From the NCBI GenBank assembly GCA_002269645.1, contig NIVC01000719.1:238020-302019 (forward strand): 64,000 nucleotides of DNA, given 5' to 3'. This DNA is from Macrostomum lignano (lineage: Eukaryota). Made by a program: the position numbers and the translations under genes. The notes beneath the pieces were generated by a model. That model did not search any database. It was not told the origin of the DNA and saw only the letters and a program-made list of their open reading frames with translations. Below are positions 3,001 through 24,340 of the stretch, one piece after another (position 1 is the stretch's first letter; each line of letters opens with the position of its first letter).

Positions 3001-6000
3001 TATTGCGCGGCGCATCTGAAGGCTGCGTACGGCTGTTCAGTCCAAGGACTGGGGGGTCGCCACACACAGCCTCAATTACCCCAGCTAATGCTGGCACCCA
3101 TTTTACAGCTGGGTGACCTGAAGCAATGCAGAGTTGAGTGTCCTGCTCAAGGACACAAATTGTTACGAGTGGGATCGGGAATCGAACCCCCGACCTTTCA
3201 GTTGTGAGTCCGACGCTCTAACCACTAGGCTACAACCCCCCATTTATAAACACACCATAATACATGCATTCATACTATGCCACTGAAAAGTGCACTATAG
3301 ACTTTAGTCACTGACCTAAGAGTTTTAAAATGGTCTGCTGCCAGCTGGTGATAGCCTACCTGAGTATCTGGGATTGGGTTGCTGGTGGTGACAGCTGGTG
3401 ATAGCCTACCTGAGTATCTGGGATTGGGTTGCTGGTGGTGGTGCCAGCTGGTGATAGCCTACCTGAGTATCTGGGATTGGGTTGCTGGTGGTGGTGCCAG
3501 CTGGTGATAGCCTACCTGAGTATCTGGGATTGGGTTGCTGGTGGTGTGACAGCTGGTGATAGCCTACCTGAGTATCTGGGATTGGGTTGCTGGTGGCAGC
3601 TGGTGATAGCCTACCTGAGTATCTCCTCTGCAATTGAACAGCTTTCAAAACGACCTTGAAAAGTTACCTGAGTGTCAGCCGGATCAATTCTGGCGGAGAA
3701 CATCCGCAGCAGTTCGTGAGCCTCAACAATGTTAGACTGGGCAGCTGGACAGACCAGCGCTAACGGTCGGCGCTGTTTGCCAGGCGAGGCGCCGTCTTTC
3801 TGCTTCTGGGTGCCGGCGCCGTCGGGCTGATCGGAGCCGGCAGCAGCGGCGGCCGCTGCGGCGGCTGCAGCCGCACTGGCGGCGCCGATGGCGTGCGAGC
3901 TGTAGGCAAACCGGAACAGCACGGGAGCCGGCCTGGCGGGGATTTTGCGCCTGCCAAGCAGCTGGTTGAGGTCGAACTGGGCTGGGCCGGCGGCGGCCGC
4001 CGATTCGTAGCTGAGATTCTCGCCGCGAACGTCTAGATAGTCGCCGAGCAGGTCGCGCAGCTGGCTGACTATGGCGGCTAGAGCTGGGTTCTCCTCGGAG
4101 TAGGCAGCCACGGATGGGGACTGGGCCAGGGCCGGACTGCGCAGCACCAGCAGGTTCAAGCGCTTGGCCAGCACCGTGTGGCGGAAGGCCACCTGAGCGA
4201 GGTGGGAGGGGATGTGGGGGTGGAGACTGAGAACAATGATAGGTGTAAGCGCACGTTATCTATACTAGCGTGTTTTAAACGCCTGCCTATTCAAGCGCGC
4301 AATTATCAACGCGCCTCTGTACAAACGCGCAGTTATAAACACGCGACCGCACAAGCGCGGAGATAAAAACGCACATCCGCACAAGCGCGCAATTATAAAC
4401 GCGCATCCACACAAGCGCGCAGATATAAACGCGCATCTACAAAAGAGCGCAACTATAAACGCGCATTCGCACAAGCGCGCAGTTATAAACGCGCATCTGC
4501 ACAAGCGCGCAATTTATAAATGCGCATCCACACAAGCGCGCAGTTACAACCGCGCATCCGCTTCAAGCGCGCAACTATAAACGCGCATCTCCTCCGTCAT
4601 CATTGGGAATAAAATCAACAGTCTCACCTGTTCAAGATGAGCCAACAAATTGGCTATAAAAACTTTGAAAGTTTGCGAAGCGGCCAGAGCCGAGTCCGTA
4701 TGCCTGATGGCAATGTCGCGCAGTGAGGGCATCAGATTGTCCAACACGCTCTGCACAGTTTGGGGCAGCTTGTCCAAACAGCAGGCGGCCTCTAGCAGGC
4801 ACAGGATGGAGTTCACCGACTCGCCATGCTCTGGCGCTGGCACCTGGCTCAGATCTTTGCTAGCCAGACCATCGAAGTCTGCCGAGGCACCTTTGGGGTC
4901 CAGAGCGTACAGCCGGTGAGCCAGGTTTGCCTGCGGGTGGGAAGTCGGTGGGGTTGGTGATATACCTAATATAACTAATTCTCAATCAAAGTCCTAATAC
5001 TAAGCCTAATTAACTAATTTCTCAATCTAACCCCTAATGCTAAGCCTAATTAACTAACTTCTCAATCTAACCCCCAATGCTAAGCCTAATTAACTAACTT
5101 CTCAATCTAACCCCTAATGCTAAGCCTAATTAACTAATTTCTCAATCTAACCCCTAATGCTAAGCCTAATTAACTAATTATAAATCCAGACGCTAATGAT
5201 AAACTAAATAAAATACTTTTTAACAACCCCCAACACCAAGCCTAATTATCTAATTAAAAGTTCAACTTCTACTGCTAAACCTATTTAACCCCTAATTCTA
5301 AGCCTAACGAACGAATTCTACACCTAATCGCAGCCTAATGCTAGAACTCAAAATTCTAATCCAAAATCGAGGTCACTAACACAACATTTTAACAATTTCC
5401 AACAAATCTTATATGCTAAAAATAATAAGACAGTTCAGAGAAGAACACAAAAACACACCTGCAGACTATGAAATATGGTCCGGCTAAGCACGGCCAATTG
5501 AGATTTGGCCGCTAGCAGAGCTTTGACGCCGTGCAATTTTTTGTCTAGGATTCTCTGACTGTCTGTCAGCTCTCTGGCCGCTCCCAGGTAATCGTCTATG
5601 GCCAGACAGGCCTGTTGGATAGTTTATAGCACACGTATAGTAGTAAAGTCCTGAAAAAATTTATTTTCTTATATGTACCTGAATTCGAGCCGGGGCCGAA
5701 CCAACATGCCTTATCCTGGTTAGTAGCTTCACAGATTTGTGCAGCTCAACGTGCCCGGTGTACAGAGACCGGAGCTCGTCGCGTTTCAATTGCAGCAGCT
5801 GGCAGCAGCGGGCCAGATCGCCACGAACGGCGCCGCCGCGAGACTGCGACTGGGCTAGACGGTCGCGCGCGTCGGCGAACAGGTTGATGATGGCAAATAT
5901 GTCGTCGCTGCTCTCTGAATTGGGTGGTGGCGGTAGTAGTAGTAGTATTAGTAGTAGTTGCAGTAGTATTAGTAGTAGTAGTTGCAGTAGTAGTAGTAGT

Positions 6001-6093
6001 AGTAGTTGCAGTAGTAGTAGTAATAATAATAATAATAATAATAATAGTAGTAGTAGTAGTAGTAGTAGTAGTAATAGTAGTAGTAGTAGTAGC

Positions 6094-6147
<54 letters not shown>

Positions 6148-6189
6148 TGGTAGTAGTAGTAGTAGTAGTAGTAGTAGTAATAATAATAA

Positions 6190-6264
<75 letters not shown>

Positions 6265-6277
6265 AAACAGAAGTGGC

Positions 6278-6340
<63 letters not shown>

Positions 6341-6427
6341 AGTAGTAGTAGCAGTAGTAGTAGTACTGCTACTACTACTAGTACTGCTAGTACTAGTACT
6401 ACTAGTACTACGTAGTAGTACTGCTAC

Positions 6428-6485
<58 letters not shown>

Positions 6486-6486
6486 C

Positions 6487-6563
<77 letters not shown>

Positions 6564-6633
6564 CAGTAGTAGTAGAAGTAGTAGTAGTAGTAGAAACAGA
6601 AGTGGCAGTAGTAGTAGTAGTAGTAGTAGTAGC

Positions 6634-6687
<54 letters not shown>

Positions 6688-6792
6688 TGGTAGTAGTAGT
6701 AGTAGTAGTAGTAGTAGTAATAATAATAATAGTAGTAGTAGTAGTAGTAGTAATAATAGTAGTAGTAGCAGTAGTAGTAGTAGTAATATTAA

Positions 6793-6834
<42 letters not shown>

Positions 6835-6871
6835 AAACAGAAGTGGCAGTAGTAGTAGTAGTAGTAGCAGC

Positions 6872-6957
<86 letters not shown>

Positions 6958-7294
6958 TAGTAGTCTTCCTTCACTTCCTTCACTAGTAATATTCAACTCC
7001 CTTACTACTACCAGTAGTAGCAGTTAATTTTTTAAATCTCTATGAATGTACAACAGACTTACTATTGAGCAGTTTATCCAAATTGTGCGAACTGTGGGAG
7101 AACTGCTCTTCAATGCGATTTTCCAAATGCTTCTTGTTCTCCGGATTAGGGCTGCATATTTGCAAAGGTGCAGGCTATAATTATCTGTATAGAAATGTGA
7201 GCAGGTAGAAAACAATAATAAAAGAGCAAACCCAACTTTCTTACTTTCGTATCAAGTCGCGAATTATTTCCAACAAAACATTGTAGGACTCCAT
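1..7294 (-). CDS. EXOC4: Exocyst complex component 4 (Sec8), 5' part, 9 exons; 3' end lies beyond the left edge
   Basis: Exons 7294-7245, 7151-7063, 5914-5679, 5611-5459, 4930-4628, 4192-3668, 2867-2718, 1948-1604, 87-<1 join at GT-AG sites with consistent phases. Peptide motifs match Sec8: MESYNVLLEIIRDL, LLQLKRDELRSLY (human LLHCKRDELRKLW), LLGDYLD (LLTEYLD), LFRFAYSSHAI (LFKFESSSHAI), APLLQS (RPLLQS). Confidence 0.92.
270..1520. repeat. 18-bp minisatellite (CCCAGTGACTTGTGTTCT)n filling an EXOC4 intron
   Basis: Near-perfect tandem copies seen directly; explains the HKSLGE/SPSDLC ORFs. Confidence 0.97.
2000..2700. repeat. G-rich ~33-35-bp minisatellite (GGGGATATGGGATCAGAGGGGAGATTGGGAACTGGGGAGAGACA-like) in an EXOC4 intron
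   Basis: Degenerate tandem copies seen directly. Confidence 0.93.
2909..3240 (-). mobile_element. tRNA-derived SINE with CORE-like central domain and (TTA)n tail
   Basis: Minus strand starts GGGGGTTGTAGCCTAGTGGTTAGAGCG (A box), then GGTTCGATTCCC (B box), then GTGTCCTTGAGCAGGACACTCAACTC...CAGCTGTAAAATGGG resembling the MIR/CORE domain; ends in an ATT/TTA tail at about 2909-2950. Confidence 0.8.
3340..3625. repeat. ~49-bp minisatellite (CTGGTGATAGCCTACCTGAGTATCTGGGATTGGGTTGCTGGTGGTG...) in an EXOC4 intron
   Basis: About six copies seen directly. Confidence 0.9.
4290..4590. repeat. 30-bp CpG-rich minisatellite (ACAAGCGCGCAATTATAAACGCGCATCCAC-like)
   Basis: Degenerate tandem copies in the intron between EXOC4 exons 4628 and 4192. 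Confidence 0.88.
4980..5180. repeat. 40-bp minisatellite (CTAATTAACTAATTTCTCAATCTAACCCCTAATGCTAAGC)n
   Basis: About five copies seen directly. Confidence 0.88.
5930..7020. repeat. (TAG)n microsatellite, ~1.1 kb, with recurring interruptions
   Basis: AGT/TAG triplets with (AAT)n and GAAACAGAAGTGGC interruptions; source of the poly-S/V/L/T/Y ORFs. Confidence 0.98.
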
Positions 7295-7369
7295 CTGCAG
7301 CAGGCAGCCTGGGCTAAAAATACACGAGGTCGAATGGGTTGCACTGTTGAATCTGCGAAAAATAATCTG

Positions 7370-7940
7370 CCTGAATCTGCCTCTCCGCCCCCCTCATTCC
7401 CTGAATCTGCCTCTCCGCCCCCCTCATTCCCTGAATCTGCCTCTCCGCCCCCCTCATTCCCTGAATCTGCCTCTCCGCCCCTCTCATTCCCTGAGTCTGC
7501 CTCTCCGCCCCCCTCATTCCCTGAATCTGCCTCTCCGCCCCCCTCATTCCCTGAATCTGCCTCTCCGCCCCTCTCATTCCCTGAATCTGCCTCTCCGCCC
7601 CTCTCATTCCCTGAGTCTGCCTCTCCGCCCCCCTCATTACCTGAATCTGCCTCTCCGCCCCTCTCATTCCCTGAGTCTGCCTCTCCGCCCCCCTCATTCC
7701 CTGAATCTGCCTCTCCGCCCCCTCATTTCCTGAATCTGCCTTTCTGCCCCCCTCATTTCCTGAATCTGCCTTTCTGCCCCCTCTCAGTCTCTGAATCTGC
7801 CTCTCCGCCCCCCTCATTCCCTGAATCTGCCTCTCCGCCCCCCTCATTCCCTGAATCTGCCTCTCCGCCCCCCCTCATTACCTGAATCTGCCTCTCCGCC
7901 CCCCTCATTCCCTGAATCTGCCTCTCCGCCCCCCTCATTC
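7370..7940. repeat. 30-bp minisatellite (CCTGAATCTGCCTCTCCGCCCCCCTCATTC)n upstream of the EXOC4 ATG
   Basis: Tandem copies seen directly; each unit carries a CCGCCC GC box. Confidence 0.95.
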
Positions 7941-8329
7941 CGTGAATCCGTCTAAAATCCACCGCATCAATCAGTGAGTCTGTCCCATTGTTTTCTATCC
8001 TAAAATTGAATAAACGACTTCAAGAAAATTCTTGTTGATATATTTGATTAAATATTAGAAATTTATTTTGCACATAAGAAATCTGCCACTAACACTATAA
8101 AAGCTAACATTCATAAATGCATTATTCAATGAAGCGTCGGAGTTTTCTTCTGTTAATGCATATCATGTAAGAGCGTACAAGTAGCCTTCGAATCAGGGGG
8201 CTCGAATACACTTGAAGTAATTATTTAAGAACCTGGAATCAAATTTCAGTATGTGGGATCCAATCTGAGGTTCTAGTTAAGGATTTGGGGGTCCTAATTA
8301 GGAATTTGAGGTTCTAGGTAAGAACCTGG

Positions 8330-8605
8330 AGTCCTAATTAGGAATTTGAGGTCCTAGGTAAGAATCTGGGGTCCTAATTAAGAACCTGGGGTCCTAGTTA
8401 AGAACCTGGGGTCCGAGTTAAGAACCTGGGGTCCTAGTTAAGAACCTGGGGTCCGAGTTAAGAACCTGGGGTCCGAGTTAAGAACCTGGGGTCCAAGTTA
8501 AGAACCTGGGGTCCTAGTTAAGAACCTGGGGTCCAAGTTAAGAACCTGGGGTCCCAGTTAAGAACCTGGGGTCCAAGTTAAGAACCTGGGGTCCCAGTTA
8601 AGAAG
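8330..8605. repeat. 20-bp minisatellite (GTTAAGAACCTGGGGTCCTA)n just downstream of the PIGP stop
   Basis: Tandem copies seen directly. Confidence 0.92.
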
Positions 8606-8622
8606 CTAAGAAGATGATTGCG

Positions 8623-9069
8623 TCATTGCTTTTCCCCATTGCAATGAGAATTATTCGACTTCTTGCTACCGCGACACCCGAGCGCTGCCCAGCACGCATC
8701 GGACGCATCGATATCGGCGACAATCGGCAGGGAGCCGCCCGGGGCAGAGCTGGTAGCCCGGCACAACCGGTCGGTCACGTGATCAACCGACTCTAACGGC
8801 CGGCAGGCTCGCCAAGCAACGAAACCGACGCTAAACTCGTAGAGCGCATAAACTAAAGGAATGAGCATGGGGCCGGTGATGGCCCAGTGACGTTCGGGCA
8901 GGTAGGTGAAGCCGCAGGCGCGGAGCCAAGCCTCCGGCAATACAGCCCAGACCAGGTAAGCCGCGAAGCCGAACCAAGCAGCCAGGTGGAGGGCGAAGCC
9001 ATAGACAGCTCGTTCCGGCAGCGGGCCCGGGTAGTGCTCGGGCGGGTTTTGATGATGAGGCTGAGGAGA
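8623..9069 (-). CDS. PIGP: GPI-GlcNAc transferase subunit P (PIG-P); start codon unresolved
   Basis: PGPLPERAVYGFALHLAAWFGFAAYLVWAVLPEAWLRACGFTYLPERHWAI matches PIG-P (PSPLPERAIYGF...YLVWAFIPESWL..LGLTYWPQKYWA). Also PLESVDHVTD and LPIVADI. A phase-0 acceptor TATTCCAG precedes 9069. The ORF-track start at 9099 is GTG, not ATG. Confidence 0.9.
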   Translation of the reverse strand, partial: SPQPHHQNPPEHYPGPLPERAVYGFALHLAAWFGFAAYLVWAVLPEAWLRACGFTYLPERHWAITGPMLIPLVYALYEFSVGFVAWRACRPLESVDHVTDRLCRATSSAPGGSLPIVADIDASDACWAALGCRGSKKSNNSHCNGEKQ

Positions 9070-9289
9070 CTGGAATAGATAACGCGCAATGGTGCACACT
9101 AAAGAATGGCTTATGAGTGCTCCAATGCATTTGATTGTGAGAGCGTTCGTTCTGAAGGTTCTGAGGACTTAATGAGGGCTCTACGAGTATATACCTACTC
9201 AGGGATTTAGGGAGCTACTTCAGGGATTCAGGGACTTACTGAAAGATATAGAGAACTACTGAGTTGTCTATGAACCTATGAGAGATCTA

Positions 9290-10540
9290 AAGATCTACTG
9301 AGGGATCTATGGACCTACTGAGGGATATATAGGGATCTACTGAGGGATATATAGGGATCTACTGAGGGATATATAGGGATCTACTGAGGGATATATATGG
9401 ATCTACTGAGGAATATATAGGGATCTACTAAGGGATATATGGCCCTACTGAGGGATATATAGGGATCTACTGAGGGATATATAGGGATCTACTGAGGGAT
9501 ATGTGGACCTACTGAGGGATATATAGGGATCTACTGAGGGATATATAGGGATCTACTGAGGGATATATGGCCCTACTGAGGGATATATAGGGATCTACTG
9601 AGGGATATATAGGGACCTACTGAGGGATATATGGACCTACTGAGGGATATATAGGGATCTACTGAGGGATATATAGGGATCTACTGAGGGATATATAGGG
9701 ACCTACTGAGGGATATATAGGGATCTACTGAGGGATATATGGACCTACTGAGGGATATATAGGGATCTACTGAGGGATATATAGGGATCTACTGAGGGAT
9801 ATATAGGGACCTACTGAGGGATATATAGGGATCTACTGAGGGATATATAGGGATCTACTGAGGGATATATAGGGATCTACTGAGGGATATATGGACCTAC
9901 TGAGGGATATATAGGGATCTACTGAGGGATATATAGGGATCTACTGAGGGATATATATAGGGATCTACTGAGGGATATATAGGGATCTACTAAGGGATAT
10001 ATAGGGATCTACTGAGGGATATATAGGGATCTACTGAGGGATCTATGGCCCTACTGAGGGATATATAGGGATCTACTGAGGGATATATGGCCCTACTGAG
10101 GGATCTATGGCCCTACTGAGGGATATATAGGGATCTACTGAGGGATATATAGGGATCGACTGAGGGATATATAGGGATCTACTGAGGGATATATAGGGAT
10201 CTACTGAGGGATATATGGACCTACTGAGGGATATATAGGGATCTACTGAGGGATCTATGGCCCTACTGAGGGATATATAGGGATCTAATGAGGGATATAT
10301 GGCCCTACTGAGGGATCTATGGCCCTACTGAGGGATCTATGGCCCTACTGAGAGATCTATGGCCCTACTGAGAGATCTATGGCCCTACTGGGGGATCTAT
10401 GGCCCTACTGAGGGATCTATTGCCCTACTGAGGGATCTATGGCCCTACTGGGGGATCTATGGCCCTACTGGGGGATCTATTGCCCTACTGAGGGATCTAT
10501 GGCCCTACTGGGGGATCTATGGCCCTACTGGGGGATATTA
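9290..10540. repeat. 20-22-bp minisatellite (CTACTGAGGGATATATAGGGAT)n
   Basis: Tandem copies seen directly. Confidence 0.95.
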
Positions 10541-11338
10541 GGGATCTACGGAGGGACCTATAGACCTATTGAGGGATTTAAGAACCTACTCGGGGATTTA
10601 GGGACTTACTGAGGGATCTAGATACCCATTCAGGAAGCTAGGTTCATTTTTGTCTTTCCAAATGGCATCCTCAAATTGGACCTTGGATGCGATATGACAT
10701 CTTGGCGCCAACGAAAAAAACCTAGTCAGGAAGTAGTGGTTAAAAAACGCTGAAAAACGCCAGTAATGGTTAAAACTTAAAATATAACTTAGGCTCATTC
10801 TAAAATTTGTTACAATGCTTAACATCAGATCCAGATTCAATAGACCGTAACCTGGCTTGAAAAATAGAATTAGGAGAGAGAGAGAGAGAGAGAGAGGGGG
10901 AGAGAGATGGATAAACAGTCTGTGGGAGAGTGACTGTACATGCGAACATTTTTGTGGTAGAAAGCGGATAGACCAGAGAGAGGGGGGAGGTGGGGAAGAG
11001 ACGGGAACAGTGAGGTGAGACAGGTGAGCCACGGGATGGAGAACCCCCCTCCCCACCTACACCGGCAGTCTCCCAGCCAGTAAAACAAAGCCAGCTCAGA
11101 CTTGGGCATTCAAAACTACAGCTTTAGCCAACCGCCTACTCAGCAAGTGAAAGAACAGTGCGGGCACGCGTTGCTGTAGACAGGTGAGGAAAGAAAGGAT
11201 GGAGTAGAGAATGAATGCTATGTAAGCTGCAGTCCTGAGCACTAGACAGCGCCATCGGGTAAGGCCTAATCGCAGGATAAACTCACAAAGCAACAGTGTC
11301 AGTGATTAACTAACATTATATTTACTAATTTATTAAAT

Positions 11339-14300
11339 ATGGATCTAAAATCTGCACTGGCAGCCCTGGCCGCCAGCCTAATTGCGGCCCTAGTGGCCAT
11401 GGACAGCGGACAGCAGAGCGGTTTGGCCGACGTTGAGGCTGCTATTAAACTGCCGCAGGGCAGGTGCTACGCCCTGGTGTCCGACTATCTCACCTATAAT
11501 AAGGTAAGGCGATTTCATTGGAGTGAAGGGCGATTTCATGGGGGTGAAGGGCGATTTCTGAGAGTGCAAGGTGATATCTGAGAGTGAAGGGCGTTTTATG
11601 GGAGTGAAAGGCGATCTCTGAGAGGGAAAGGCGATTTCTGAGAGTGAAAGGCGATTTCTGAGAAGTGAAGAGCGATTTGCGAGTGAAAGGCGATTTCTGT
11701 GAGTGAAGGGTGATTTCTTATAGTGAACGGCGATTTGAGAGTGAAGGGCGATTTCTGAGAGTGAAGGGTGATTTCTTAGAGTGAACGGCGATTTCTGAGA
11801 GTGAAGGGCGATTTCTGAGAGTGAAAGGCGATTTCTTAGAGTGAAGGGCGATTTCTGAGAGTGAAAGACGATTTTTGAGAGTGAATGGCGCTTTCTGAGA
11901 GTGAAAGACGATTTCTGAGAGTGAAGGGTGATTTCTTAGAGTGAACGGCGATTTCTGAGAGTGAAGGGCGATTTCTGAGAGTGAAAGGCGATTTCTTAGA
12001 GTGAAGGGCGATTTCTGAGAGTGAAAGACGATTTCTGAGAGTGAAGGGCGCTTTCTGAGAGTGAAAGACGATTTCTGAGAGTGAAAGACGATTTCTGAGA
12101 GTGAATGGCGCTTTCTGAGAGAGAGTGAAAGGCGATTTCTGAGAGTAAAAGGCGATTTCTGAGAGTGAAAGACGATTTCTGAGAGTGAATGGCGCTTTCT
12201 GAGAGTGAAAGGCGATTTCTGAGAGTGAATGGCGCTTTCTGAGAGAGAGTGAAAGGCGATTTCTGAGAGTGAAAGGCGATTTCTGAGAGTAAAAGGCGAT
12301 TTCTGAGAGTGAAAGGCGATTTCTAAGAGCCTAGTTCGTAGCGTAGACATTCTTGACAATTAAAAGACATTAAAGGGCATTCATATAATTAGTTTTAATC
12401 ACAACAAATTAATCCACAAAAAGCAATGGAATATATTTTACAATTAAAACAAAACATACATCTTAGGTTTGCTTGCGCTGAAACAATGATGTTTAATGTT
12501 AATGCTTTTGAATCACTATTAATACTAATAAGAGTACTATTACTGTACAGCAATATAATATTGTATTATCTTCGTAGATTTCAAAAAAAAACCTAATATA
12601 TTTTTGGCAATAAAAATTAATCCGCATACAATTATATTAAACAATTAACTGATAATGGTCAGTGATATTCTACCTGTACTTGATTGTACGGAATGATAAA
12701 TTAAAAGGTAATTAATTTACAAAATGCATGCCTAAATCTACTAATTAATATATTCATCATTTTAAGACAATATTCAACATTCATTTTCGCCTTATTTGGG
12801 ATTTCGGGATACAGCATCTAGTGTAAAATAAATTTATTAGCTTAAAAGCAATACTAGTGTGAAAATTTCATCAGGGATTAGAGACTGAAGGATTGGGGAT
12901 TAAAGACTGAAGGATTAGGGATTAGAGACTGAAGGATTATGGATTAGAGACTGAAGGATTAGGGATTAGAGACTGAAGGATTAGGGATTAGTAGAGGATG
13001 AAGGATTAGGGATTAGTAGAGGATGAAGGATTAGGGATTAAAGACTGAAGGATAAGGGATTAGTAGAGGCTGAAGGATCAGTTATTAAAGACTGAAGGAT
13101 CAGGAACTACATCAGTGCATTCTTTGAAAAAAATATTGATATATAGAGTAGTGATAAAACAATTGGAATACAGCGAATGAAGACAACCAAAACTGACATG
13201 TATGCTATAGGTATAGAACAGACTCTGACAGCTATCACCTGACACACATCTAACTATCATCTGACACACACCTAGCTATCATCTGACACACATCTAACTA
13301 TCATCTGACACACACCTAGCTATCATCTGACACACATCTAACTATCATCTGACACACACCTAGCTATCATCTGACACACACCTAGCTATCATCTGACACA
13401 CACCTAGCTATCATCTGACACACACCTAGCTATCATCTGACACACACCTGACACACACCTAGCTATCACCTGACACACCTAGCTATCATCTGACACACAC
13501 CTGACACACACCTAGCTATCATCTGACACACATCTGACACACACCTAGCTATCATCTGACACACACCTAGCTATCATCTGACACACACCTGACACACACC
13601 TAGCTATCACCTGACACACCTAGCTATCATCTGACACACACCTAGCTATCATCTGACACACACCTGACACACACCTAGCTATCACCTGACACACCTAGCT
13701 ATCATCTGACACACACCTAGCTATCACCTGACACACACCTGACACACACCTAGCTATCATCTGACACACATCTGACACACACCTAGCTATCATCTGACAC
13801 ACACCTGACACACACCTAGCTATCACCTGACACACCTAGCTATCACCTGACACACACCTGACACACACCTAGCTATCATCTGACACACATCTGACACACA
13901 CCTAGCTATCATCTGACACACACCTAGCTATCATCTGACACACACCTGACACACACCTAGCTATCACCTGACACACCTAGCTATCATCTGACACACACCT
14001 AGCTATCATCTGACACACACCTGACACACACCTAGCTATCACCTGACACACCTAGCTATCATCTGACACACACCTAGCTATCACCTGACACACACCTGAC
14101 ACACACCTAGCTATCATCTGACACACATCTGACACACACCTAGCTATCATTTGACACACACCTAGCTATCATCTGACACACACCTAGCTATCATCTGACA
14201 CACACCTGACACACACCTAGCTATCATCTGACACACACCTGACACACACCTAGCTATCACCTGACACACACCTAGCTATCATCTGACACACACCTGACAC

Positions 14301-17300
14301 ACACCTAGCTATCACCTGACACACACCTAGCTATCATCTGACACACACCTGACACACACCTAGCTATCATCTGACACACACCTGACACACACCTAGCTAT
14401 CACCTGACACACACCTAGCTATCATCTGACACACACCTGACACACACCTAGCTATCACCTGACACACACCTAGCTATCACCTGACACACACCTAGCTATC
14501 ATCTGACACACACCTGACACACACCTAGCTATCATCTGCGCTGTCAATAACGCCACCGCTGCGAATGAAGGCCAAGATGCGCTGGGACAGCGGATCAGCC
14601 GGGTCAGCCAGCAGTTCAATAATGTCAAAGTGATCCCGCTCGGGTACAATATTAACATCGGCCTGACGACCGTGCCGCCTGAGCAAGTCGCACAGTTCGC
14701 GACTTTGTCTAGTAAACTCGGGCGATTCTAGGGCACCAACGATGGCAAGAATTGGCGCTCTCACGGGGCTGGCCAGGAGCTGCTGTTGAAGGCCGCGCAT
14801 AGGGCTCAGCGCGGCAGCTCTGGCGGTGTTCATGCCCAGCGGATGGTTCACGCTAGTTTTCACAAGCGGCATCAAATCAAATACGCCTGCGGGTCGGATC
14901 AGCAAGTAGCCATCAATCATGTCAGCAAGTCATCAATCATGTCAGCAAGTCATCAATCATGTCAAAAACTAGCTATCAATCATGTCAAAAACTAGCTATC
15001 AATCATGTCAAAAACTAGCTATCAATCATGTCAGCAAGTAGCCATCAATCATGTCAGCAAGTAGCCAACAATCATGTCAGCAAGTAGCCATCAATCATGT
15101 CAGCAAGTAGCCATTAATCATCTCAGCAAGTAGCCATCAATCATGTCAGCAAGTAGTCATCAATCATGTCACCAATTAGCCATCAATCATGTCAGCAAGT
15201 AGTCATCAATCATGTCACCAATTAGCCATCAATCATGGCAGCAAGTAGTCATCAATCATGTCACCAATTAGCCATCAATCATGTCAGCAAGTAGTCATCA
15301 ATCATATCAGCAAGTCATAAATCATGTCAGCAAGTAGCCATCAATCATGTCAGCAAGTAGTCATCAATCATGTCAGCAAGTAGTCATCAATCATATCAGC
15401 AAGTCATCAATCATATCAGCAAATTATCAATCATATCAGCAAGCTATCAATCATATCAGCAAGCCATCAATCATGTCAGCAAGTAGCCACCAATCATGTC
15501 AGCAAGTAGTCATCAATCATATCAGCAAGTTATCAATCATATCAGCAAGTCATCAATCATATCAGCAAGTCATCAATCATATCAGCAAGCCATCAATCAT
15601 ATCAGCAAGCCATCAATCATGTCAGCAATTAGCTATCAATAATGTCAGCAAGTAGCCATCAATAATGTCAGCAATTAGCGATCAATGTTAGTTAGCAATG
15701 TCAGCAAGTAGCCACCAATCATGTCAGCAAGTAGCCATCAATCATATCAGCAAGTCATCAATCATATCAGCAAGTCATCAATCATATCAGCAAGTCATCA
15801 ATAATGTCAGCAATTAGCTATCAATAATGTCAGCAAGCAGCCTTCAATAATGTCAGCAATTAGCTATCAATAATGTCAGCAATTAGCTATCAATAATGTC
15901 AGCAAGTAGCCTTCAATAATGTCAGCAATTAGCTATCAATAATGTCAGCAAGTAGCCTTCAATAATGTCAGCAATTAGCTATCAATGGCGTCAGCAAGTA
16001 GCCATCAGTGAAGCAGTTTACCTGAGATCGGCAACACGCCTTTAATAAGACCAGCCAATTCGCCCGGCCAATGCACACAAGCCCCGGCCGTCACGGCCAG
16101 ATGTCCACCGGCCGAGTGTCCGGCCACATAAACGCCGGACAAGCCGTCAGACCGAGCTCGCTCCAAACAGGCACGCAATCCGGTTTCAACCAGTCGAACA
16201 GTGTCCTCAATTGACACCGCGGGTACGCAATCGTAGCCTAGGCTAGCAAAATGCAGGCCATTGTTAACAAAGGTATCGGCCATGTGGCAGCACATTCTGG
16301 CAGTTAGTTCCGGTGTTTGCCAATAGCCGCCGTGGATAAACACAAACAGTGGTGACTTGGCATTGCCGCCGCTATCAGACGGGGTGAACCAATAGTACAC
16401 CAATTCGTTGCTATCGCTCTGCCCATACTGCACAATCTCCGGTTTTAATCGTTCAATTACTAACTCTGATTGTTCGCGTAATAATTTGAAATGCGCGTCA
16501 ACTATTTTAGTTGGGTCCAAGCGCTTGGACCAGTGACTGGGCAGGTAGGGAATATCACTGTCGGACATTGTTTTTAACGGTGATGTAGTTTTGCACGCAA
16601 CCGCTCTGAAGACTTGAACACGGTGTTTTTTAAGGGTGACCGACGTTTGGCATTAAGGGAACGGGGATTTGAGAATTTTATGCGAAATTTGATTTTCGAT
16701 CGGTATTATAAACATGTATCAGCGTCACATGGATTTGGAAAAAATGGGTAGCTTTGTAAGAAGTATCAGTTGGATTTAGAAAGTGTCAGGTGGTTTTAAA
16801 AAGGTGTCACGTGGCTTTGAAAAAAGTGTCAGATAGCCTTATAAAAATGTCAGGTAGCTTTATAGCAATATCAGGTGGCTTTGGAATGAGTGTCAGGTAG
16901 CTTTATAAAAATGTCAGGTAGCTTTATAGCAATATCAGGTGGCTTTGGAATGAGTGTCAGGTAGTTTTATAAAAAGTATCAGGTAGCTTTATAAAAGTGT
17001 CAGGTGGATTTTAGAAAGTGTCAGGTAGATTTAGAAAGTGTCGGGTGGATTTAGAAAGTGTCAGGTGGATTTAGAAAGTGTCACGTGGATTTTAGAAAGT
17101 ATCGAGTGGATTTAGAAAGTGTCGGGTGGATTTAGAAAGTGTCAGGTGGATTTTAGAAAGTGTCGGGTGGATCTAGAAAGTGTCGGGTGGATCTAGAAAG
17201 TGTCAGGTGGATTTAGAAAGTGTCAGGTGGATTTAGAAAGTTTCAGGTGGATTTTAGAAAGTGTCACGTGGATTTTAGAAAGTATCGAGTGGATTTAGAA

Positions 17301-20097
17301 AGTGTCACGTGGATTTTAGAAAGTGTCAGGTGGATTTTAGAAAGTGTCACGTGGATTTTAGAAAGTGTCACGTGGATTTAGAAAGTGTCACGTGGATTTT
17401 AGAAAGTATCGAGTGGATTTAGAAAGTGTCACGTGGATTTTAGAAAGTGTCAGGTGGATTTTAGAAAGTGTCACGTGGATTTTAGAAAGTGTCACGTGGA
17501 TTTTAGAAAGTGTCACGTGGATTTTAGAAAGTGTCGGGTGGATTTAGAAAGTGTCACGTGGATTTTAGAAAGTGTCAGGTGGATTTTAGAAAGTGTCAGG
17601 TGGATTTTAGAAAGTGTCAGGTGGATTTTAGAAAGTGTCACGTGGATTTTAGAAAGTGTCACATGGATTTTAGAAAGTGTCACGTGGATTTTAGAAAGTG
17701 TCAGGTGGATTTTAGAAAGTGTCACGTGGATTTTAGAAAGTGTCGGGTGGATCTAGAAAGTGTCGGGTGGATCTAGAAAGTGTCGGGTGGATCTAGAAAG
17801 TGTCGGGTGGATCTAGAAAGTGTCGGGTGGATTTAGAAAGTGTCGGGTGGATTTAGAAAGTGTCAGGTGGATTTAGAAAGTGTCACGTGGATTTTAGAAA
17901 GTGTCACGTGGATTTAGAAAGTGTCACGTGGATTTTAGAAAGTGTCACGTGGATTTAGAAAGTGTCGGGTGGATTTAGAAAGTGTCACGTGGATTTTAGA
18001 AAGTGTCACATGGATTTTAGAAAGTGTCACGTGGATTTTAGAAAGTGTCAGGTGGATTTTAGAAAGTGTCACGTGGATTTTAGAAAGTGTCACGTGGATT
18101 TTAGAAAGTGTCACATGGATTTTAGAAAGTGTCACGTGGATTTTAGAAAGTGTCAGGTGGATTTTAGAAAGTGTCACGTGGATTTTAGAAAGTGTCGGGT
18201 GGATCTAGAAAGTGTCGGGTGGATCTAGAAAGTGTCGGGTGGATCTAGAAAGTGTCGGGTGGATCTAGAAAGTGTCGGGTGGATTTAGAAAGTGTCGGGT
18301 GGATTTAGAAAGTGTCAGGTGGATTTAGAAAGTGTCACGTGGATTTTAGAAAGTGTCACGTGGATTTAGAAAGTGTCACGTGGATTTTAGAAAGTGTCAC
18401 GTGGATTTAGAAAGTGTCGGGTGGATTTAGAAAGTGTCACGTGGATTTTAGAAAGTGTCACATGGATTTTAGAAAGTGTCACGTGGATTTTAGAAAGTGT
18501 CAGGTGGATTTTAGAAAGTGTCACGTGGATTTTAGAAAGTGTCGGGTGGATCTAGAAAGTGTCGGGTGGATCTAGAAAGTGTCGGGTGGATCTAGAAAGT
18601 GTCGGGTGGATCTAGAAAGTGTCGGGTGGATTTAGAAAGTGTCGGGTGGATTTAGAAAGTGTCAGGTGGATTTAGAAAGTGTCACGTGGATTTTAGAAAG
18701 TGTCACGTGGATTTAGAAAGTGTCACGTGGATTTTAGAAAGTGTCACGTGGATTTAGAAAGTGTCGGGTGGATTTAGAAAGTGTCGGGTGGATTTAGAAA
18801 GTGTCGGGTGGATTTAGAAAGTGTCGGGTGGATTTAGAAAGTGTCAGGTGGATTTAGAAAGTGTCACGTGGATTTTAGAAAGTGTCACGTGGATTTAGAA
18901 AGTGTCACGTGGATTTTAGAAAGTGTCACGTGGATTTAGAAAGTGTCGGGTGGATTTAGAAAGTGTCACGTGGATTTAGAAAGTGTCACGTGGATTTTAG
19001 AAAGTGTCACGTGGATTTAGAAAGTGTCGGGTGGATTTAGAAAGTGTCAGGTGGATTTAGAAAGTGTCACGTGGATTTTAGAAAGTGTCACGTGGATTTA
19101 GAAAGTGTCACGTGGATTTTAGAAAGTGTCACGTGGATTTAGAAAGTGTCGGGTGGATTTAGAAAGTGTCACGTGGATTTAGAAAGTGTCGGGTGGATTT
19201 AGAAAGTGTCAGGTGGATTTTAGAAAATGTCATATTTCTAGAGGAAGTATTATTTGGCTTTTTGAAAATGTGGCTAGGGGTTTCAGAAGACATGTCTAAG
19301 AAAGTTTCTAGGAAAGAAGTATTTAAAAAACGTATTTCACTATCATGTACAATATCCTCACTTTGATTTCATACACAACATTAAAAACCCAGTGGCAGCC
19401 GGCCATAGTGGACGTGGAAAGCATGGCCCTGCCGGGCATCACCGACATCGGCTCGTCCTTCACCATGTACTACCGAATGCCTCTGTGGGGCTCGGTGCCC
19501 TACACCCAGACTGTCAGCTACGTTGAAGAAGGCAGAACTTTTGCTTACGAAAGCGACGGCCTAATGCGAGTGAAAACCAGCCTGACTGTGCGAACTAAAT
19601 CCGACAAGGTCTGCTACATCCGGGTGCAGTTGGCTTCTGCCAGGACCAGCCTGCTGTTCCACGTGAGTGCGACAGAATTGTTGACGGTTTGTTAATGTTA
19701 ACTCTGAGATTCTGAGAATGACAATAATCTCAATGAGAATAACTGCCGAGATTCTTCCACTGAGAATAATTAACTCTCAAAGTCACATTTACTACGATCA
19801 ACTCTCAAAATCTCACACTGAGAATAATCAACTCTCAAAATCTCACACTGCGAACTATCAACCCTCAAAATCTCACACTGCGAACTATCAACCCTCAAAA
19901 TCTCACACTGCGAACTATCAATCCTCAAAATCTCACACTGAGAACGATCAATCCTCAAAATCTCACAGTGACTCTGTTAATCCCTCACCCCACACGAATT
20001 GCAGTACGTGTTCCGGCCGCTACTAGGATTCTATTATCAGAACTGGGCAACGCAGTCACTGATCAACGTGAAGATGCACAACATGCACAATTTCTAA
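11339..20097 (+). CDS. SRPBCC/START-like (polyketide cyclase-2 type) protein with N-terminal signal/anchor, 175 aa, 3 exons
   Basis: Exons 11339-11503, 19393-19662, 20005-20097, all phase 0 GT-AG. Joined sequence ...DVEAAIKLPQGRCYALVSDYLTYNK|WQPAIVDVES...GSSFTMYY...QTVSYVEEGRTFAYES... fits the SRPBCC pattern (I-x-x-P..vw.llsD..y..W.P; vt..e.gr.fay). Hydrophobic N-terminus ALAALAASLIAALVA. Family call is from motif recall. Confidence 0.72.
11504..12330. repeat. 20-bp minisatellite (GTGAAAGGCGATTTCTGAGA)n starting at the intron-1 donor
   Basis: Tandem copies seen directly. Confidence 0.95.
12870..13100. repeat. ~22-bp minisatellite (GATTAGAGACTGAAGGATTAGG)n
   Basis: Tandem copies seen directly. 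Confidence 0.88.
13225..14535. repeat. Composite minisatellite (CTAGCTATCATCTGACACACAC / CTGACACACAC)n directly 3' of AFMID
   Basis: Tandem copies seen directly; the terminal unit overlaps the AFMID stop codon. Confidence 0.95.
14525..16568 (-). CDS. AFMID: Kynurenine formamidase (arylformamidase), 2 exons, nested antisense in intron 1 of the SRPBCC gene
   Basis: Exons 16568-16022 and 14886-14525 with a phase-1 intron (ISG|VFDL). Motifs: YLPSHWSKR, LFVFIHGGYWQ, GHSAGGHL nucleophile elbow, SGVFDL.PL..T.VN, ESPEF..QS, DHFDIIE (catalytic His). Confidence 0.93.
14900..16005. repeat. 19-23-bp minisatellite (CATCAATCATGTCAGCAAGTAGC)n filling the AFMID intron
   Basis: Array reaches to within about 15 nt of both splice sites. 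Confidence 0.95.
16750..19230. repeat. 20/21-bp minisatellite (GGATTT(T)AGAAAGTGTC[ACGT/AGGT/GGGT])n, ~2.5 kb
   Basis: Tandem copies seen directly; many units contain CACGTG. Confidence 0.97.
19790..19970. repeat. 30-bp minisatellite (TCTCACACTGCGAACTATCAACCCTCAAAA)n in SRPBCC intron 2
   Basis: About six copies seen directly. Confidence 0.9.
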
Positions 20098-20299
20098 CAA
20101 GGTGCAAATCGAACAGAGAGGACGTTCTAACAATCTGTTAGAAAAAAGTTACAATACTATTGTGTACAACTAACTAATATATCTGATAGTAGTTAGGCAA
20201 TGTTTATTAAAATATTTTATTATTAATTAGCTAACATGTCTGCATTCGAATGCTACTTAAATGCAATTTAATACTACAACTAACTTCTGAAGCAATTAG

Positions 20300-20900
20300 A
20301 AGTCCATGGCTTAAGTACGCTCGTAATTAGGAGTCCATGGTTAAACTAATTAGGAGTCCATGGTTAAACTAATTAGGAGTCTGTGGTTAAACCAATTAGG
20401 AGTCTGTGGCTTAAGTACGCTCGTAATTAGGAGTCCATGGCTGAACTAATTAGGAGTTCATGGTTAAACCAATTAGGAGTCTGTGGTTAAACCAATTAGG
20501 AGTTCATGGTTAAACCAATTAGGAGTCTGTGGTTAAACCAATTAGGAGTCTGTGGTTAAACCAATTAGGAGTCTGTGGTTAAACCAATTAGGAGTCTGTG
20601 GTTAAACCAATTAGGAGTCTGTGGTTAAACCAATTAGGAGTCTGTGGTTAAACCAATTAGGAGTCTGTGGTTAAACCAATTAGGAGTCTGTGGTTAAACC
20701 AATTAGGAGTCTGTGGTTAAACCAATTAGGAGTCTGTGGTTAAAGCAATTAGGAGTCTGTGGTTAAAGCAATTAGGAGTTTGTGTTTAAACTAATTAGGA
20801 GTCCATGGTTAAACCAATTAGGAGTCTGTGGTTAAACTAATTAGGAGTCTGTGGTTAAACTAATTAGGAGTCCATGGTTAAACTACTTAGGAGTCCATGG
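20300..20900. repeat. 23-bp minisatellite (TTAAACCAATTAGGAGTCTGTGG)n
   Basis: Tandem copies downstream of the SRPBCC stop. Confidence 0.94.
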
Positions 20901-22790: not shown

Positions 22791-22920
22791 TTTATATAAA
22801 AACAACCATTAACTTATCTAACGATAACCAACCTTGAACTACTTTAAACAGCCAAAAACTGAAGCCACCATAGCTATCATATAGCAGTAACAAAATTTGC
22901 CTTAAGTCATCGAAATTCGT

Positions 22921-23852: not shown

Positions 23853-23884
<32 letters not shown>

Positions 23885-23989
23885 CTAAGGCAAGACACAT
23901 AGTATGACAGACAGACAGACGGACACTAAGGCAAGACACATAGTATGACAGACAGACAGACAGACACAGACAGACAGACACAGACAGGC

Positions 23990-24026
<37 letters not shown>

Positions 24027-24271
24027 CAGACAGACAGACACTAAGACAGAGACAGACAGACAGACAGACAGACACTAAGACAGAGACAGACAGACAGACA
24101 GACAGACACTAAGACAGAGACAGACAGATAGACAGACAGACACTAAGACAGAGACAGACAGACAGACAGACACTAAGACAGAGACAGACAGACAGACAGA
24201 CAGACACTAAGACAGAGACAGACAGATAGACAGACACTAAGACAGACAGACAGACAGACAGACACTAAGAC

Positions 24272-24340
<69 letters not shown>

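What the first reader, a model, noticed from the sequence alone, without database searches (positions are those of the whole stretch)
8623..9100. PIGP has no in-frame ATG; a phase-0 acceptor suggests the spliced-leader AUG supplies the start codon
Seen: no ATG precedes the conserved PGPLPER motif in frame; the first in-frame Met is about 70 codons in, past the first TM segment. The exon opens with TATTCCAG|TCT CCT CAG in phase 0. Established: platyhelminth spliced leaders end in AUG, which can act as the initiator Met. SL addition would give M-SPQPHHQNPPEHYPGPLPER, a normal-length PIG-P N-terminus. This would make GPI-anchor synthesis dependent on trans-splicing. Alternative: a cis exon ending at 10610 (CCCTCA|GTAAGT, also phase 0) with a distant ATG near 10797.
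Basis: partly seen in the sequence, partly recalled or inferred. Interest (0 to 1): 0.75.

Follow-up and report, generated by a model that had tools for sequence, protein, structure and literature searches.

The report
Flatworm PIG-P gene lacking own start codon
This is the single-exon PIG-P (GPI-anchor synthesis) gene of the flatworm Macrostomum lignano; it has no start codon of its own and most likely borrows the AUG at the end of the trans-spliced leader, a mechanism already known in flatworms, so this is a tidy new example, not a new kind of thing.

Summary
The window is Macrostomum lignano contig NIVC01000719.1 (assembly Mlig_3_7). On the minus strand, 9069..8626 encodes a complete PIG-P domain (Pfam E=2.6e-19). 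There is no in-frame ATG from the upstream stop (9171-9169) to Met68, which lies in the second membrane segment. The exon opens in phase 0 after TTCCAG, the published M. lignano trans-splice acceptor motif [T/C]TNCAG. The M. lignano spliced leader ends in ATG.

The GenBank model of a paralogous copy (PAA80119.1, "partial") starts at the first codon after that AG. It came from a pipeline that cuts transcripts at spliced-leader read peaks. It shares its transcription-unit name with the upstream gene.

It carries in-frame stops in both paralogous copies, and it is AT-rich (39% against 62% GC).

Leader-AUG initiation gives a 149-residue protein whose N-terminus has a normal length for the family.

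I saw no leader-exon junction reads and no translation data, so the mechanism is inferred (confidence about 0.78). Use of the leader AUG as initiator has been known in flatworms since 2006, so this is a new member of a known kind, of modest interest.

The parts
8626..9069 (-). PIG-P coding exon, 148 codons (SPQPHHQNPPEHYPGPLPER...NGEKQ). It is a single exon with no ATG before codon 68.
   Evidence: Pfam PF08510 E=2.6e-19. 99% identical to GenBank PAA80119.1. GC 61.7%, third-position GC 68%.
8623..8625 (-). Stop codon TGA of PIG-P.
9070..9075 (-). 3' splice acceptor TTCCAG, the proposed spliced-leader trans-splice site. The exon begins at 9069 in phase 0.
   Evidence: Sequence. Fits the [T/C]TNCAG trans-acceptor motif of M. 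lignano (PMC8629364). Identical in all three paralogous copies. The GenBank model starts at the next base.
9061..9062 (-). Second in-frame AG (TCTCCTCAG|CCT), a possible alternative acceptor 9 nt downstream. It would give M-PHHQNPPEH...
   Evidence: Sequence. CCTCAG misses position 2 of the published motif. It is the acceptor used by the chimeric UniProt model A0A1I8JPL8.
9076..9236 (-). Unique sequence just upstream of the acceptor, the proximal part of the outron. It holds the in-frame stop TAA at 9171-9169 and no in-frame ATG.
   Evidence: 97-99% identical among the three copies.
9237..10620 (.). 22-nt tandem-repeat array inside the presumed outron. Its length differs between the paralogous copies.
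   Evidence: Tandem Repeats Finder. The distance from the donor-like site to the acceptor is 1540 nt in the window, 410 in L001 and 880 in L003.
10610..10798 (-). I judge it not to be a real coding exon.
   Evidence: Open in the window. Two in-frame stops in L001 and one in L003. GC 39%.
8262..8604 (.). 20-nt tandem-repeat array in the presumed 3' UTR of PIG-P.
8062..8067 (-). AATAAA, the only canonical poly(A) signal between the PIG-P stop and the next gene. It lies 555 nt after the stop.
14525..16640 (-). Upstream same-strand gene (BD-FAE / Abhydrolase_3 family, formamidase-like; GenBank PAA77867.1, Mlig023774g2). It has two exons with a 23-nt tandem array in the intron. Its stop at 14527-14525 lies about 5455 nt upstream of the PIG-P acceptor.
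7306..7316 (-). 5' end of the downstream same-strand gene (839 aa), with tandem acceptors TTTTTAG|CCCAG|GC. It is a candidate operon partner of PIG-P.
   Evidence: About 1315 nt from the PIG-P stop, of which 922 nt are tandem arrays.

Best explanation
The exon at 9069..8626 (minus strand) is the functional PIG-P gene of Macrostomum lignano. PIG-P is a subunit of the GPI N-acetylglucosaminyltransferase complex.

Proposed mechanism:
1. The primary transcript starts well upstream, possibly as read-through from the formamidase-like gene. It runs through a repeat-filled outron.
2. The 35-nt spliced leader is trans-spliced onto the acceptor TTCCAG| at 9070.
3. The leader ends in AUG and the acceptor is in phase 0. 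The leader's AUG is therefore the first AUG of the mature mRNA and opens a 149-codon frame, M-SPQPHHQNPPEHYPGPLPER...
4. That frame encodes a complete two-pass PIG-P protein with an N-terminus of normal length. Without the leader, no AUG can reach the first membrane segment.

What is shown and what is inferred:
- Shown: the gene's identity, the lack of an ATG, the phase, the acceptor motif, conservation in three copies, and the absence of a conserved cis ATG exon.
- Taken from the literature: the leader sequence, the acceptor motif, and how the annotation pipeline works.
- Inferred: that the leader is actually added at this site, and that ribosomes start at its AUG.
For: 1. Identity. Pfam PIG-P covers nearly the whole profile within the exon. 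A HMMER search of 1.84 billion representative proteins gave 584 relatives.

2. No start codon. There is no in-frame ATG between the stop at 9171-9169 and Met68. The same holds in all three genomic copies.

3. Organism and leader. The window is 100% identical to NIVC01000719.1 of M. lignano. The leader ends in ATG, and the SL RNA gene has GTAAG immediately after it (PMC8629364). Macrostomum workers already call this ATG a translation start codon (PMC10468722).

4. Acceptor. TTCCAG| fits [T/C]TNCAG. It is in phase 0 and is identical in the three copies over more than 49 nt upstream.

5. Transcript-based annotation.
- PAA80119.1 (Mlig033760g6, 'partial') starts at the S codon right after the AG.
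- The frame stays open for 33 codons upstream, so a longer transcript would have given a longer 5'-partial ORF. The model's 5' end must therefore lie within 2 nt of the acceptor.
- The pipeline cuts transcription units at leader-read peaks (PMC5730564).
- The upstream gene on the same contig is Mlig033760g4. The shared prefix points to one transcription-unit cluster.

6. N-terminal length. In 111 Met-started homologues the P-x-R-A-x-Y-G motif starts at a median index of 16 (quartiles 9 and 24). The leader-Met product gives 18.

7. Modelled mRNA. The leader AUG is the first AUG. The second AUG is out of frame (49 aa). The third is Met68 (81 aa, lacking the first membrane segment).

8. No conserved cis exon. 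A scan of the whole interval back to the upstream gene found GT[AG]AG donors preceded by an in-phase ATG frame 0 times in L001, once in the window and 0 times in L003.

9. Precedent. In Schistosoma mansoni the leader AUG is in frame with 28% of trans-spliced transcripts, and more than 40 cDNAs need it (Cheng et al. 2006, as cited in PMC9851317, and PMC12582326).
Against: - I could see no read or cDNA carrying the leader-exon junction. The two junction 27-mers are absent from the only searchable contig collection, which is not a Macrostomum transcriptome.
- GenBank does not annotate PIG-P as a CDS in the window's own copy or in the third copy. I cannot explain this.
- The leader AUG sits in a weak context, with U at -3 and U at +4 (inference from the sequences).
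- In this window a good donor (TCA|GTAAGT) with an in-phase ATG frame lies upstream of the acceptor. It could compete in cis for this copy.
- The indels that break that frame in the other copies lie in T-runs of a long-read assembly and could be assembly errors.
- No other flatworm orthologue could be retrieved for comparison.
Confidence: 0.78

Rival explanations
1. Cis-splicing supplies the start. An upstream exon beginning at ATG 10798 (or at the in-frame ATG about 9 codons earlier) and ending at 10610 (TCA|GTAAGT, phase 0) is joined to the acceptor at 9070. This would give PIG-P a 63-72 residue N-terminal extension.
For: - In the window the frame is open for more than 100 codons up to a near-consensus donor, GTAAGT.
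- It is the only such candidate in the 5.5-kb interval.
- The last ~110 nt before the donor are identical between the window and L001.
Against: - In L001, whose PIG-P is the one annotated from transcripts, two 1-nt indels put two stops between the ATG and the donor. No ATG follows them.
- In L003 the ATG is out of frame and a stop intervenes.
- GC is 39% and third-position GC 44%, against 62% and 68% for the PIG-P exon and 52-58% for the neighbouring gene's exons.
- 80% of the homologues with a locatable motif have it within 25 residues of the Met, so no such extension is expected.
- The GenBank model has no upstream exon. With the stops in L001, such an exon could not produce a 5'-partial ORF starting exactly at Ser1.
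Confidence: 0.07
2. There is no functional start. The locus is a decaying or untranslated copy, or it is translated only from a non-AUG codon or from Met68. The real PIG-P activity would then come from another gene.
For: - The gene is a single exon without an ATG.
- One of the three copies (L003) has a 1-nt deletion that shifts the frame after residue 110.
- Two of the three copies carry no CDS annotation.
Against: - The window and L001 exons differ at 3 of 447 nt and keep the frame, while the surrounding colinear DNA is about 85-95% identical with many indels.
- The L003 deletion is in a C-run of a long-read assembly.
- The cluster holding P0001 (with the chimeric UniProt model P0003) is the only Macrostomum PIG-P entry returned by a word-indexed search, a full HMMER scan and a profile search.
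- The gene model rests on transcripts.
- A Met68 product would lack the first membrane segment and half of the domain.
Confidence: 0.08
3. PIG-P is the C-terminal part of a fusion protein with the upstream formamidase-like gene, as in UniProt model A0A1I8JPL8. That model is 221 aa and reads ...AFIRSGG|PHHQNPP....
For: - A public gene model makes this join.
- The two genes share a transcription-unit prefix in the Mlig_3_7 annotation.
Against: - The join uses a weak donor (GGC|GTTATT) 15 nt before the upstream gene's own stop.
- The model starts at an internal Met of that gene.
- It removes 14 residues from inside the second membrane segment of PIG-P, and it is cut short at the C-terminus. These are marks of an ab initio rescue of an ATG-less frame.
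- The transcript-based annotation keeps the two genes apart.
- Splicing from the upstream gene's real exon-1 donor would be in phase 1, out of frame (my arithmetic from its coordinates).
Confidence: 0.02

Closest known systems
Flatworm mRNAs that take their initiator Met from the 3'-terminal AUG of the spliced leader (Cheng, Cohen, Ndegwa & Davis 2006, J Biol Chem 281:733; called 'slORFs' in PMC9851317)
   Same: - The leader ends in AUG.
- The acceptor is in frame with the reading frame.
- There is no genomic AUG upstream of the conserved protein start.
- The leader AUG is the first AUG of the mature mRNA.
   Different: - The precedent was shown in Schistosoma mansoni with cDNAs and translation assays. 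Here it is inferred for a free-living macrostomid from genome sequence and annotation only.
- I found no published list of leader-AUG-dependent genes for M. lignano, and no mention of PIG-P among such genes.
PIG-P / Gpi19 subunit of the GPI-GlcNAc transferase complex (Pfam PF08510)
   Same: - Full-length domain match.
- Two hydrophobic segments.
- The N-terminal P-x-P-x-R-A-x-Y-G-F motif.
- Small size, 149 aa with the leader Met.
   Different: - The gene carries no start codon.
- The whole coding region is in one exon.
- The C-terminal tail (CRGSKKSNNSHCNGEKQ) lies beyond the Pfam match, so it was not compared with other members.
Spliced-leader-resolved operons of M. lignano (Ustyantsev & Berezikov 2021, PMC8629364)
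   Same: - Four same-strand genes in a row.
- Three of the four gene models start at or within 3 nt of an acceptor, PIG-P among them.
- PIG-P and the upstream gene share a transcription-unit name.
- Intergenic DNA is swollen by tandem repeats, as that paper describes.
- The PIG-P to 839-aa-gene spacing is about 390 nt after subtracting tandem arrays.
   Different: - The spacing from the upstream gene to PIG-P is about 1.7 kb even after subtracting tandem arrays. That is above the paper's 1-kb threshold, though transposon-derived sequence was not subtracted here.
- No polycistronic RNA was seen directly.

Membership tests
PIG-P (Pfam PF08510) | Domain match above the curated gathering score | tested here: met
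   69.7 bits against a cut-off of 39.3, E=2.6e-19, profile positions 2-117 of 121.
PIG-P (Pfam PF08510) | Two membrane-spanning segments flanking the conserved W-A-x-x-P-E loop | tested here: met
   Kyte-Doolittle peaks centred on residues 30-38 and 75-77. Nearly invariant Y23, G24, F25, W41, P45, P58, W62 and P67 in a 73-sequence alignment.
PIG-P (Pfam PF08510) | Short cytosolic N-terminus ending in P-x-P-x-R-A-x-Y-G-F | tested here: met
   The motif is present (PGPLPERAVYGF). With the leader Met it starts at index 18, against a median of 16 in 111 homologues.
PIG-P (Pfam PF08510) | Acts in the GPI-GlcNAc transferase complex | not testable with these tools
   Needs biochemistry or genetics.
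Spliced-leader-AUG-initiated flatworm mRNA | The organism's spliced leader ends in AUG followed directly by the donor GU | tested here: met
   From the literature, not recomputed. The 35-nt M. lignano leader ends ...TTGCATG, with GTAAG next in the SL RNA gene (PMC8629364). No SL RNA gene lies in this window.
Spliced-leader-AUG-initiated flatworm mRNA | The leader is added at an acceptor at the 5' end of the coding exon | tested here: inconclusive
   Indirect only. The acceptor fits the motif. The GenBank transcript-based model starts at the base after the AG, and the pipeline cuts at leader-read peaks. No junction read was seen.
Spliced-leader-AUG-initiated flatworm mRNA | The acceptor is in phase with the reading frame (phase 0) | tested here: met
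   AG|TCT CCT CAG... is in the PIG-P frame. The second AG, 9 nt on, is also in phase.
Spliced-leader-AUG-initiated flatworm mRNA | No usable genomic AUG upstream of the conserved protein start | tested here: met
   No in-frame ATG from the stop at 9171-9169 to Met68, in all three copies. No conserved cis ATG exon.
Spliced-leader-AUG-initiated flatworm mRNA | Translation demonstrably starts at the leader AUG | not testable with these tools
   Needs ribosome profiling, proteomics or a reporter.
M. lignano spliced-leader operon (criteria of PMC8629364) | Adjacent same-strand genes, the downstream one trans-spliced, less than 1 kb apart after subtracting repeats | tested here: inconclusive
   PIG-P to the 839-aa gene: 1315 nt, of which 922 are tandem arrays, leaving about 390 nt. 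This meets the criterion if both are trans-spliced. Upstream gene to PIG-P: 5455 nt, of which about 3770 are tandem arrays, leaving about 1690 nt. This does not meet it, but transposon content was not subtracted.
M. lignano spliced-leader operon (criteria of PMC8629364) | Genes derive from one assembled transcription unit | tested here: met
   On contig NIVC01000597.1 the upstream gene is Mlig033760g4 and PIG-P is Mlig033760g6. The prefix denotes a transcription-unit cluster (PMC5730564).

The most novel reading that the evidence does not exclude
An essential housekeeping step, the first step of GPI-anchor synthesis, has become obligately dependent on spliced-leader trans-splicing in Macrostomum. 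The only PIG-P gene has lost its own start codon (or never had one), so the leader is part of the coding sequence and not just a 5' UTR. If many of the M. lignano proteins labelled 'partial' in GenBank are of this type, leader-donated start codons would be a systematic, unannotated feature of this model organism's proteome.
Probability: 0.6. Interest if true: 0.4.

Novelty: new member of a known kind. Interest (0 to 1): 0.3.

Why it matters
It matters for annotation and for experiments in a model flatworm.

**Annotation**
- GenBank lists this protein as "partial", and two of the three genomic copies carry no CDS at all.
- UniProt holds a chimeric model that fuses it to the neighbouring gene.
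- Recognising that the leader supplies Met1 gives the complete 149-residue protein. It also suggests a simple rule that annotation pipelines for flatworms could apply: the gene model starts at an acceptor, in phase 0, with no ATG.

**Experiments**
- A genomic PIG-P fragment without the leader should not be translatable. This affects transgene and rescue design in M. lignano.

**Biology**
- This is one more case where trans-splicing is needed for the coding sequence itself. The mechanism has been established in flatworms since 2006, so it does not open a new question.

Tried and rejected
**Orthologues in other flatworms**
- A word-indexed search with the protein found only the M. lignano entry and one beetle protein.
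- A profile of 73 diverse PIG-P sequences found 96 proteins, none named as a flatworm other than P0001.
- Names for nine of the best HMMER hits were a tardigrade, a barnacle, a limpet or unnamed.
- The "same ATG-less exon in relatives" test could therefore not be done.

**Junction evidence**
- The two possible leader-exon 27-mers are absent from the JGI metagenome contigs. This was expected, since that is not a Macrostomum transcriptome.
- No Logan or transcriptome-derived protein starting M-SPQ... is in the protein collection. The cluster has only two members.

**Supplementary tables**
- The tables of the two annotation papers held as text do not mention Mlig033760 or PIGP. None are held for PMC8629364.

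**SL RNA gene in the window**
- None. There were 0 matches to the 35-mer with up to 3 mismatches and no Rfam family at gathering score.

**Solved structures**
- No significant sequence match in the PDB.

**Naming the downstream 839-aa gene**
- I searched with the ORF 3611..4192 and got nothing at E<=1e-10. That ORF is probably not one of its exons.

**Cheng et al. 2006**
- The paper is not held in the library. It is cited through PMC9851317 and PMC12582326.

**Fusion model A0A1I8JPL8**
- Rejected as a prediction artefact (see the rival explanations).

Full report
**What is in the sequence**

The feature lies on the minus strand. Read 5'->3', the sequence is ...GCGCGTTATCTATTCCAG|TCT CCT CAG CCT CAT CAT CAA AAC CCG CCC GAG CAC TAC CCG GGC CCG CTG CCG GAA CGA... 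It runs open to TGA at 8625-8623.

- The acceptor AG is at 9071-9070 and the exon's first base is 9069.
- In the same frame upstream there are 33 sense codons (VLRTFRTNALTIKCIGALISHSLVCTIARYLFQ), none of them ATG. Before them is a TAA at 9171-9169.
- The first Met of the 148-codon exon is residue 68.
- A second AG, 9 nt into the exon at 9062-9061, is also in phase.

**What the exon encodes**

Pfam PIG-P (PF08510) matches residues 20-126 and covers profile positions 2-117 of 121. The score is 69.7 bits against a curated cut-off of 39.3 (E=2.6e-19).

A HMMER scan of 1.84 billion representative proteins gave 584 relatives at E<=0.001.

Hydropathy shows two hydrophobic segments centred near residues 30-38 and 75-77. 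Met68 sits at the start of the second. A product started there would have 81 residues and would lack the first segment and the conserved N-terminal motif.

**Where the window comes from**

The best protein hit is GenBank PAA80119.1, [quoted passage not shown]. It is 148 aa and 99% identical.

Fetching the neighbour's contigs showed that window 26640..4525 is 100% identical to NIVC01000719.1:242544-264659 of assembly GCA_002269645.1, Mlig_3_7.

The assembly holds three colinear copies of the locus:

| Copy | Contig | PIG-P annotation |
|---|---|---|
| L001 | NIVC01000597.1 | Annotated (PAA80119.1) |
| L002 (this window) | NIVC01000719.1 | Not called as a CDS |
| L003 | NIVC01000596.1 | Not called as a CDS |

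Colinear blocks between L001 and the window are about 85-95% identical, with many repeat-length differences. The PIG-P exon differs at only 3 of 447 nt, giving one amino-acid change, V72A.

**The spliced leader**

Ustyantsev & Berezikov (PMC8629364) report the following for M. lignano:
- There is a single 35-nt leader, CGGTCTCTTACTGCGAAGACTCAATTTATTGCATG.
- The donor GTAAG follows it immediately in the SL RNA gene.
- About 30% of genes are trans-spliced.
- The top trans-acceptor motif is [T/C]TNCAG, sited right at the junction.

The PIG-P acceptor TTCCAG fits that motif. The second AG (CCTCAG) misses position 2. The motif is common, with 180 occurrences on this strand of the window, so the fit is necessary but not telling.

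Wiberg et al. (PMC10468722) already describe the terminal ATG of the Macrostomum leader as a likely translation start codon.

For flatworms in general, Cheng et al. 2006 showed that the leader AUG is in frame with 28% of trans-spliced Schistosoma mansoni transcripts. More than 40 cDNAs need it. I cite this through PMC9851317 and PMC12582326. The paper itself is not held.

**Indirect transcript evidence**

The Mlig_3_7 annotation was built in these steps (PMC5730564):
1. Transcription units were assembled from RNA-seq.
2. Leader-containing reads were trimmed and mapped.
3. The units were cut at the resulting peaks by the TBONE pipeline.
4. ORFs were called with TransDecoder.

PAA80119.1 occupies L001 10001-10447 as one interval. 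Its first codon is the TCT directly after TTCCAG.

The frame is open for 33 more codons upstream. A transcript model reaching further 5' would have produced a longer 5'-partial ORF, or no ORF of 100 aa or more at all. The model's 5' end must therefore lie within 2 nt of the acceptor. This step is my inference.

For contrast, the upstream gene's models are also "partial". They start at ACGTCG|GTC, which is not an acceptor, 24 codons before a normal ATG (MSDSD...). So "partial" alone means little. What counts is that the PIG-P model starts exactly at an AG and has no ATG.

The upstream gene on the same contig is Mlig033760g4 and PIG-P is Mlig033760g6. The shared prefix marks one transcription-unit cluster. 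At least one assembled precursor therefore spans both genes and was cut between them.

**Is the resulting protein sensible?**

In 111 Met-started homologues where I could locate the motif P-x-R-A-x-Y-G, it starts at a median index of 16, with quartiles 9 and 24. 80% are at 25 or less.

M+SPQPHHQNPPEHYPGPLPER puts it at 18. Several invertebrate homologues also align through the PPEH.PGP.P stretch, for example MPPRIGPTVVEHSPGPKPERAIYGF. No extra N-terminal exon is needed.

In the modelled mature mRNA:
- The leader AUG is the first AUG and opens 149 codons.
- The next AUG is out of frame (49 codons).
- The third AUG is Met68.

The site is real. CCCTCA|GTAAGT has its last exon base at 10610. The in-phase frame is open for more than 100 codons and contains ATG at 10798-10796 plus another about 9 codons earlier.

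It does not survive comparison with the other copies:
- In L001, two 1-nt indels in T-runs shift the frame and create two stops between the ATG and the donor. No ATG follows them.
- In L003 the ATG is out of frame and a stop intervenes.

I then scanned the whole interval from the upstream gene's stop to the PIG-P acceptor for GT[AG]AG donors preceded by an in-phase ATG frame. It found none in L001, only this one in the window, and none in L003.

The candidate exon is 39% GC (third positions 44%). The PIG-P exon is 62% (68%), and the neighbour's exons are 52-58%.

One caveat: the indels lie in homopolymers of a long-read assembly and could be errors. For the window copy itself, cis use of this donor cannot be excluded.

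**The chimeric public model**

UniProt A0A1I8JPL8 (221 aa) joins the C-terminal exon of the upstream gene to PIG-P at the second AG (...AFIRSGG|PHHQ...). It also deletes 14 residues inside the second membrane segment.

Its donor (GGC|GTTATT) is weak and lies 15 nt before that gene's own stop. I read the model as a gene predictor's rescue of an ATG-less frame.

**Context**

All four genes lie on the minus strand of the window, in this order:

| Gene | Window coordinates | 5' end of the GenBank model |
|---|---|---|
| LIN37 | about 25270..22921 | Right after a genomic ATG that follows TTTCAG |
| Formamidase-like BD-FAE gene | 16640..14525 | Not at an AG |
| PIG-P | 9069..8623 | Exactly after an AG |
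| 839-aa gene | from 7306 downward | At tandem AGs |

Intergenic and intronic DNA is packed with 20-30-nt tandem arrays. Their lengths differ between copies. For example, the array between the donor-like site and the PIG-P acceptor makes that distance 1540 nt in the window, 410 in L001 and 880 in L003.

After subtracting tandem arrays:
- The PIG-P to 839-aa-gene spacing is about 390 nt. That is within the published 1-kb operon criterion.
- The upstream-gene to PIG-P spacing is about 1.7 kb, above the criterion.

**What remains unshown**

- I saw no leader-junction read and no evidence of translation. The junction 27-mers are absent from the one contig collection I could scan.
- I could not retrieve any other flatworm PIG-P.
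- I cannot explain why GenBank calls the CDS in only one of the three copies. L003 has a 1-nt deletion in a C-run that shifts the frame after residue 110. The window copy is intact.

**Verdict**

- The interpretation, that the leader AUG is the initiator, is supported by convergent indirect evidence (confidence about 0.78).
- The mechanism is an established one in flatworms, and the gene is already in GenBank as a "partial" protein. The finding is therefore a new member of a known kind.
- It is useful for annotation and for transgene design in M. lignano, but not surprising to a specialist (interest 0.3).

Noticed in passing
window 25271-25280 (minus strand); L003 2845-2862: The GenBank LIN37 model (254 aa, 'partial') starts at CAC directly after a genomic ATG that itself follows an acceptor (L003: GATTTCAG|ATG|CAC). 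This looks as if trimming of leader reads also removed a genomic ATG. If so, the true mRNA would read leader-AUG then AUG, both in frame. In the window copy the AG is mutated (TTTCTGATG), yet the model starts at the same base.
   Followed up: partly
window 7306-7316 (minus strand); L001 13950-13965; L003 20750-20765: The downstream 839/841-aa gene has tandem acceptors 5 nt apart (TTTT[C/T]AG|CCCAG|GC). The models in different copies start at one or the other. L003 has CTG in place of the first AG. At either site the leader AUG is out of frame with the annotated ORF, which has its own ATG 4-6 codons in. The leader AUG would therefore open a short overlapping upstream ORF.
   Followed up: partly
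L003 17540-17550 (corresponds to window about 8740-8745): The third genomic copy of PIG-P has a 1-nt deletion in a C-run (CTGCCCCGGG becomes CTG-CCCGGG). It shifts the frame after residue 110. This is either a pseudogenised copy or a long-read homopolymer error.
   Followed up: partly
window 8623-9069, and L003: PIG-P is annotated as a CDS in only one of the three Mlig_3_7 copies (NIVC01000597.1). The intact copy in this window (NIVC01000719.1) has no CDS in the gene calls on record.
   Followed up: partly
window 7370-7948, 8262-8604, 9237-10620, 11506-12329, 12873-13104, 13232-14538, 14899-16007: Seven separate tandem-repeat arrays with 20-30-nt units fill the intergenic spaces, the PIG-P 3' UTR and the intron of the upstream gene. 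Array lengths differ several-fold between the paralogous copies.
   Followed up: partly
window 14525-16640 (minus strand): The upstream gene is a BD-FAE / Abhydrolase_3 family protein with HGGYW and GHSAGG motifs, so it looks like a kynurenine formamidase. All three GenBank models are '5'-partial' because the frame is open 24-25 codons upstream of the evident start, MSDSD. This is an annotation artefact and differs from the PIG-P case.
   Followed up: partly
UniProt A0A1I8JPL8 (P0003), mapped to window about 14540-14830 and 8690-9060: This public protein model is a chimera of the upstream gene's last exon and PIG-P, with an internal 14-residue deletion in PIG-P.
   Followed up: yes
window 206-1537 and 5737-7027: Two long low-complexity stretches are open in several frames on both strands: a hexapeptide-type (GEHKSL)n array at 206-1537 and trinucleotide-type runs at 5737-7027. 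The ORF at 3611-4192 (minus strand, 193 aa) found no homologue at E<=1e-10.
   Followed up: no
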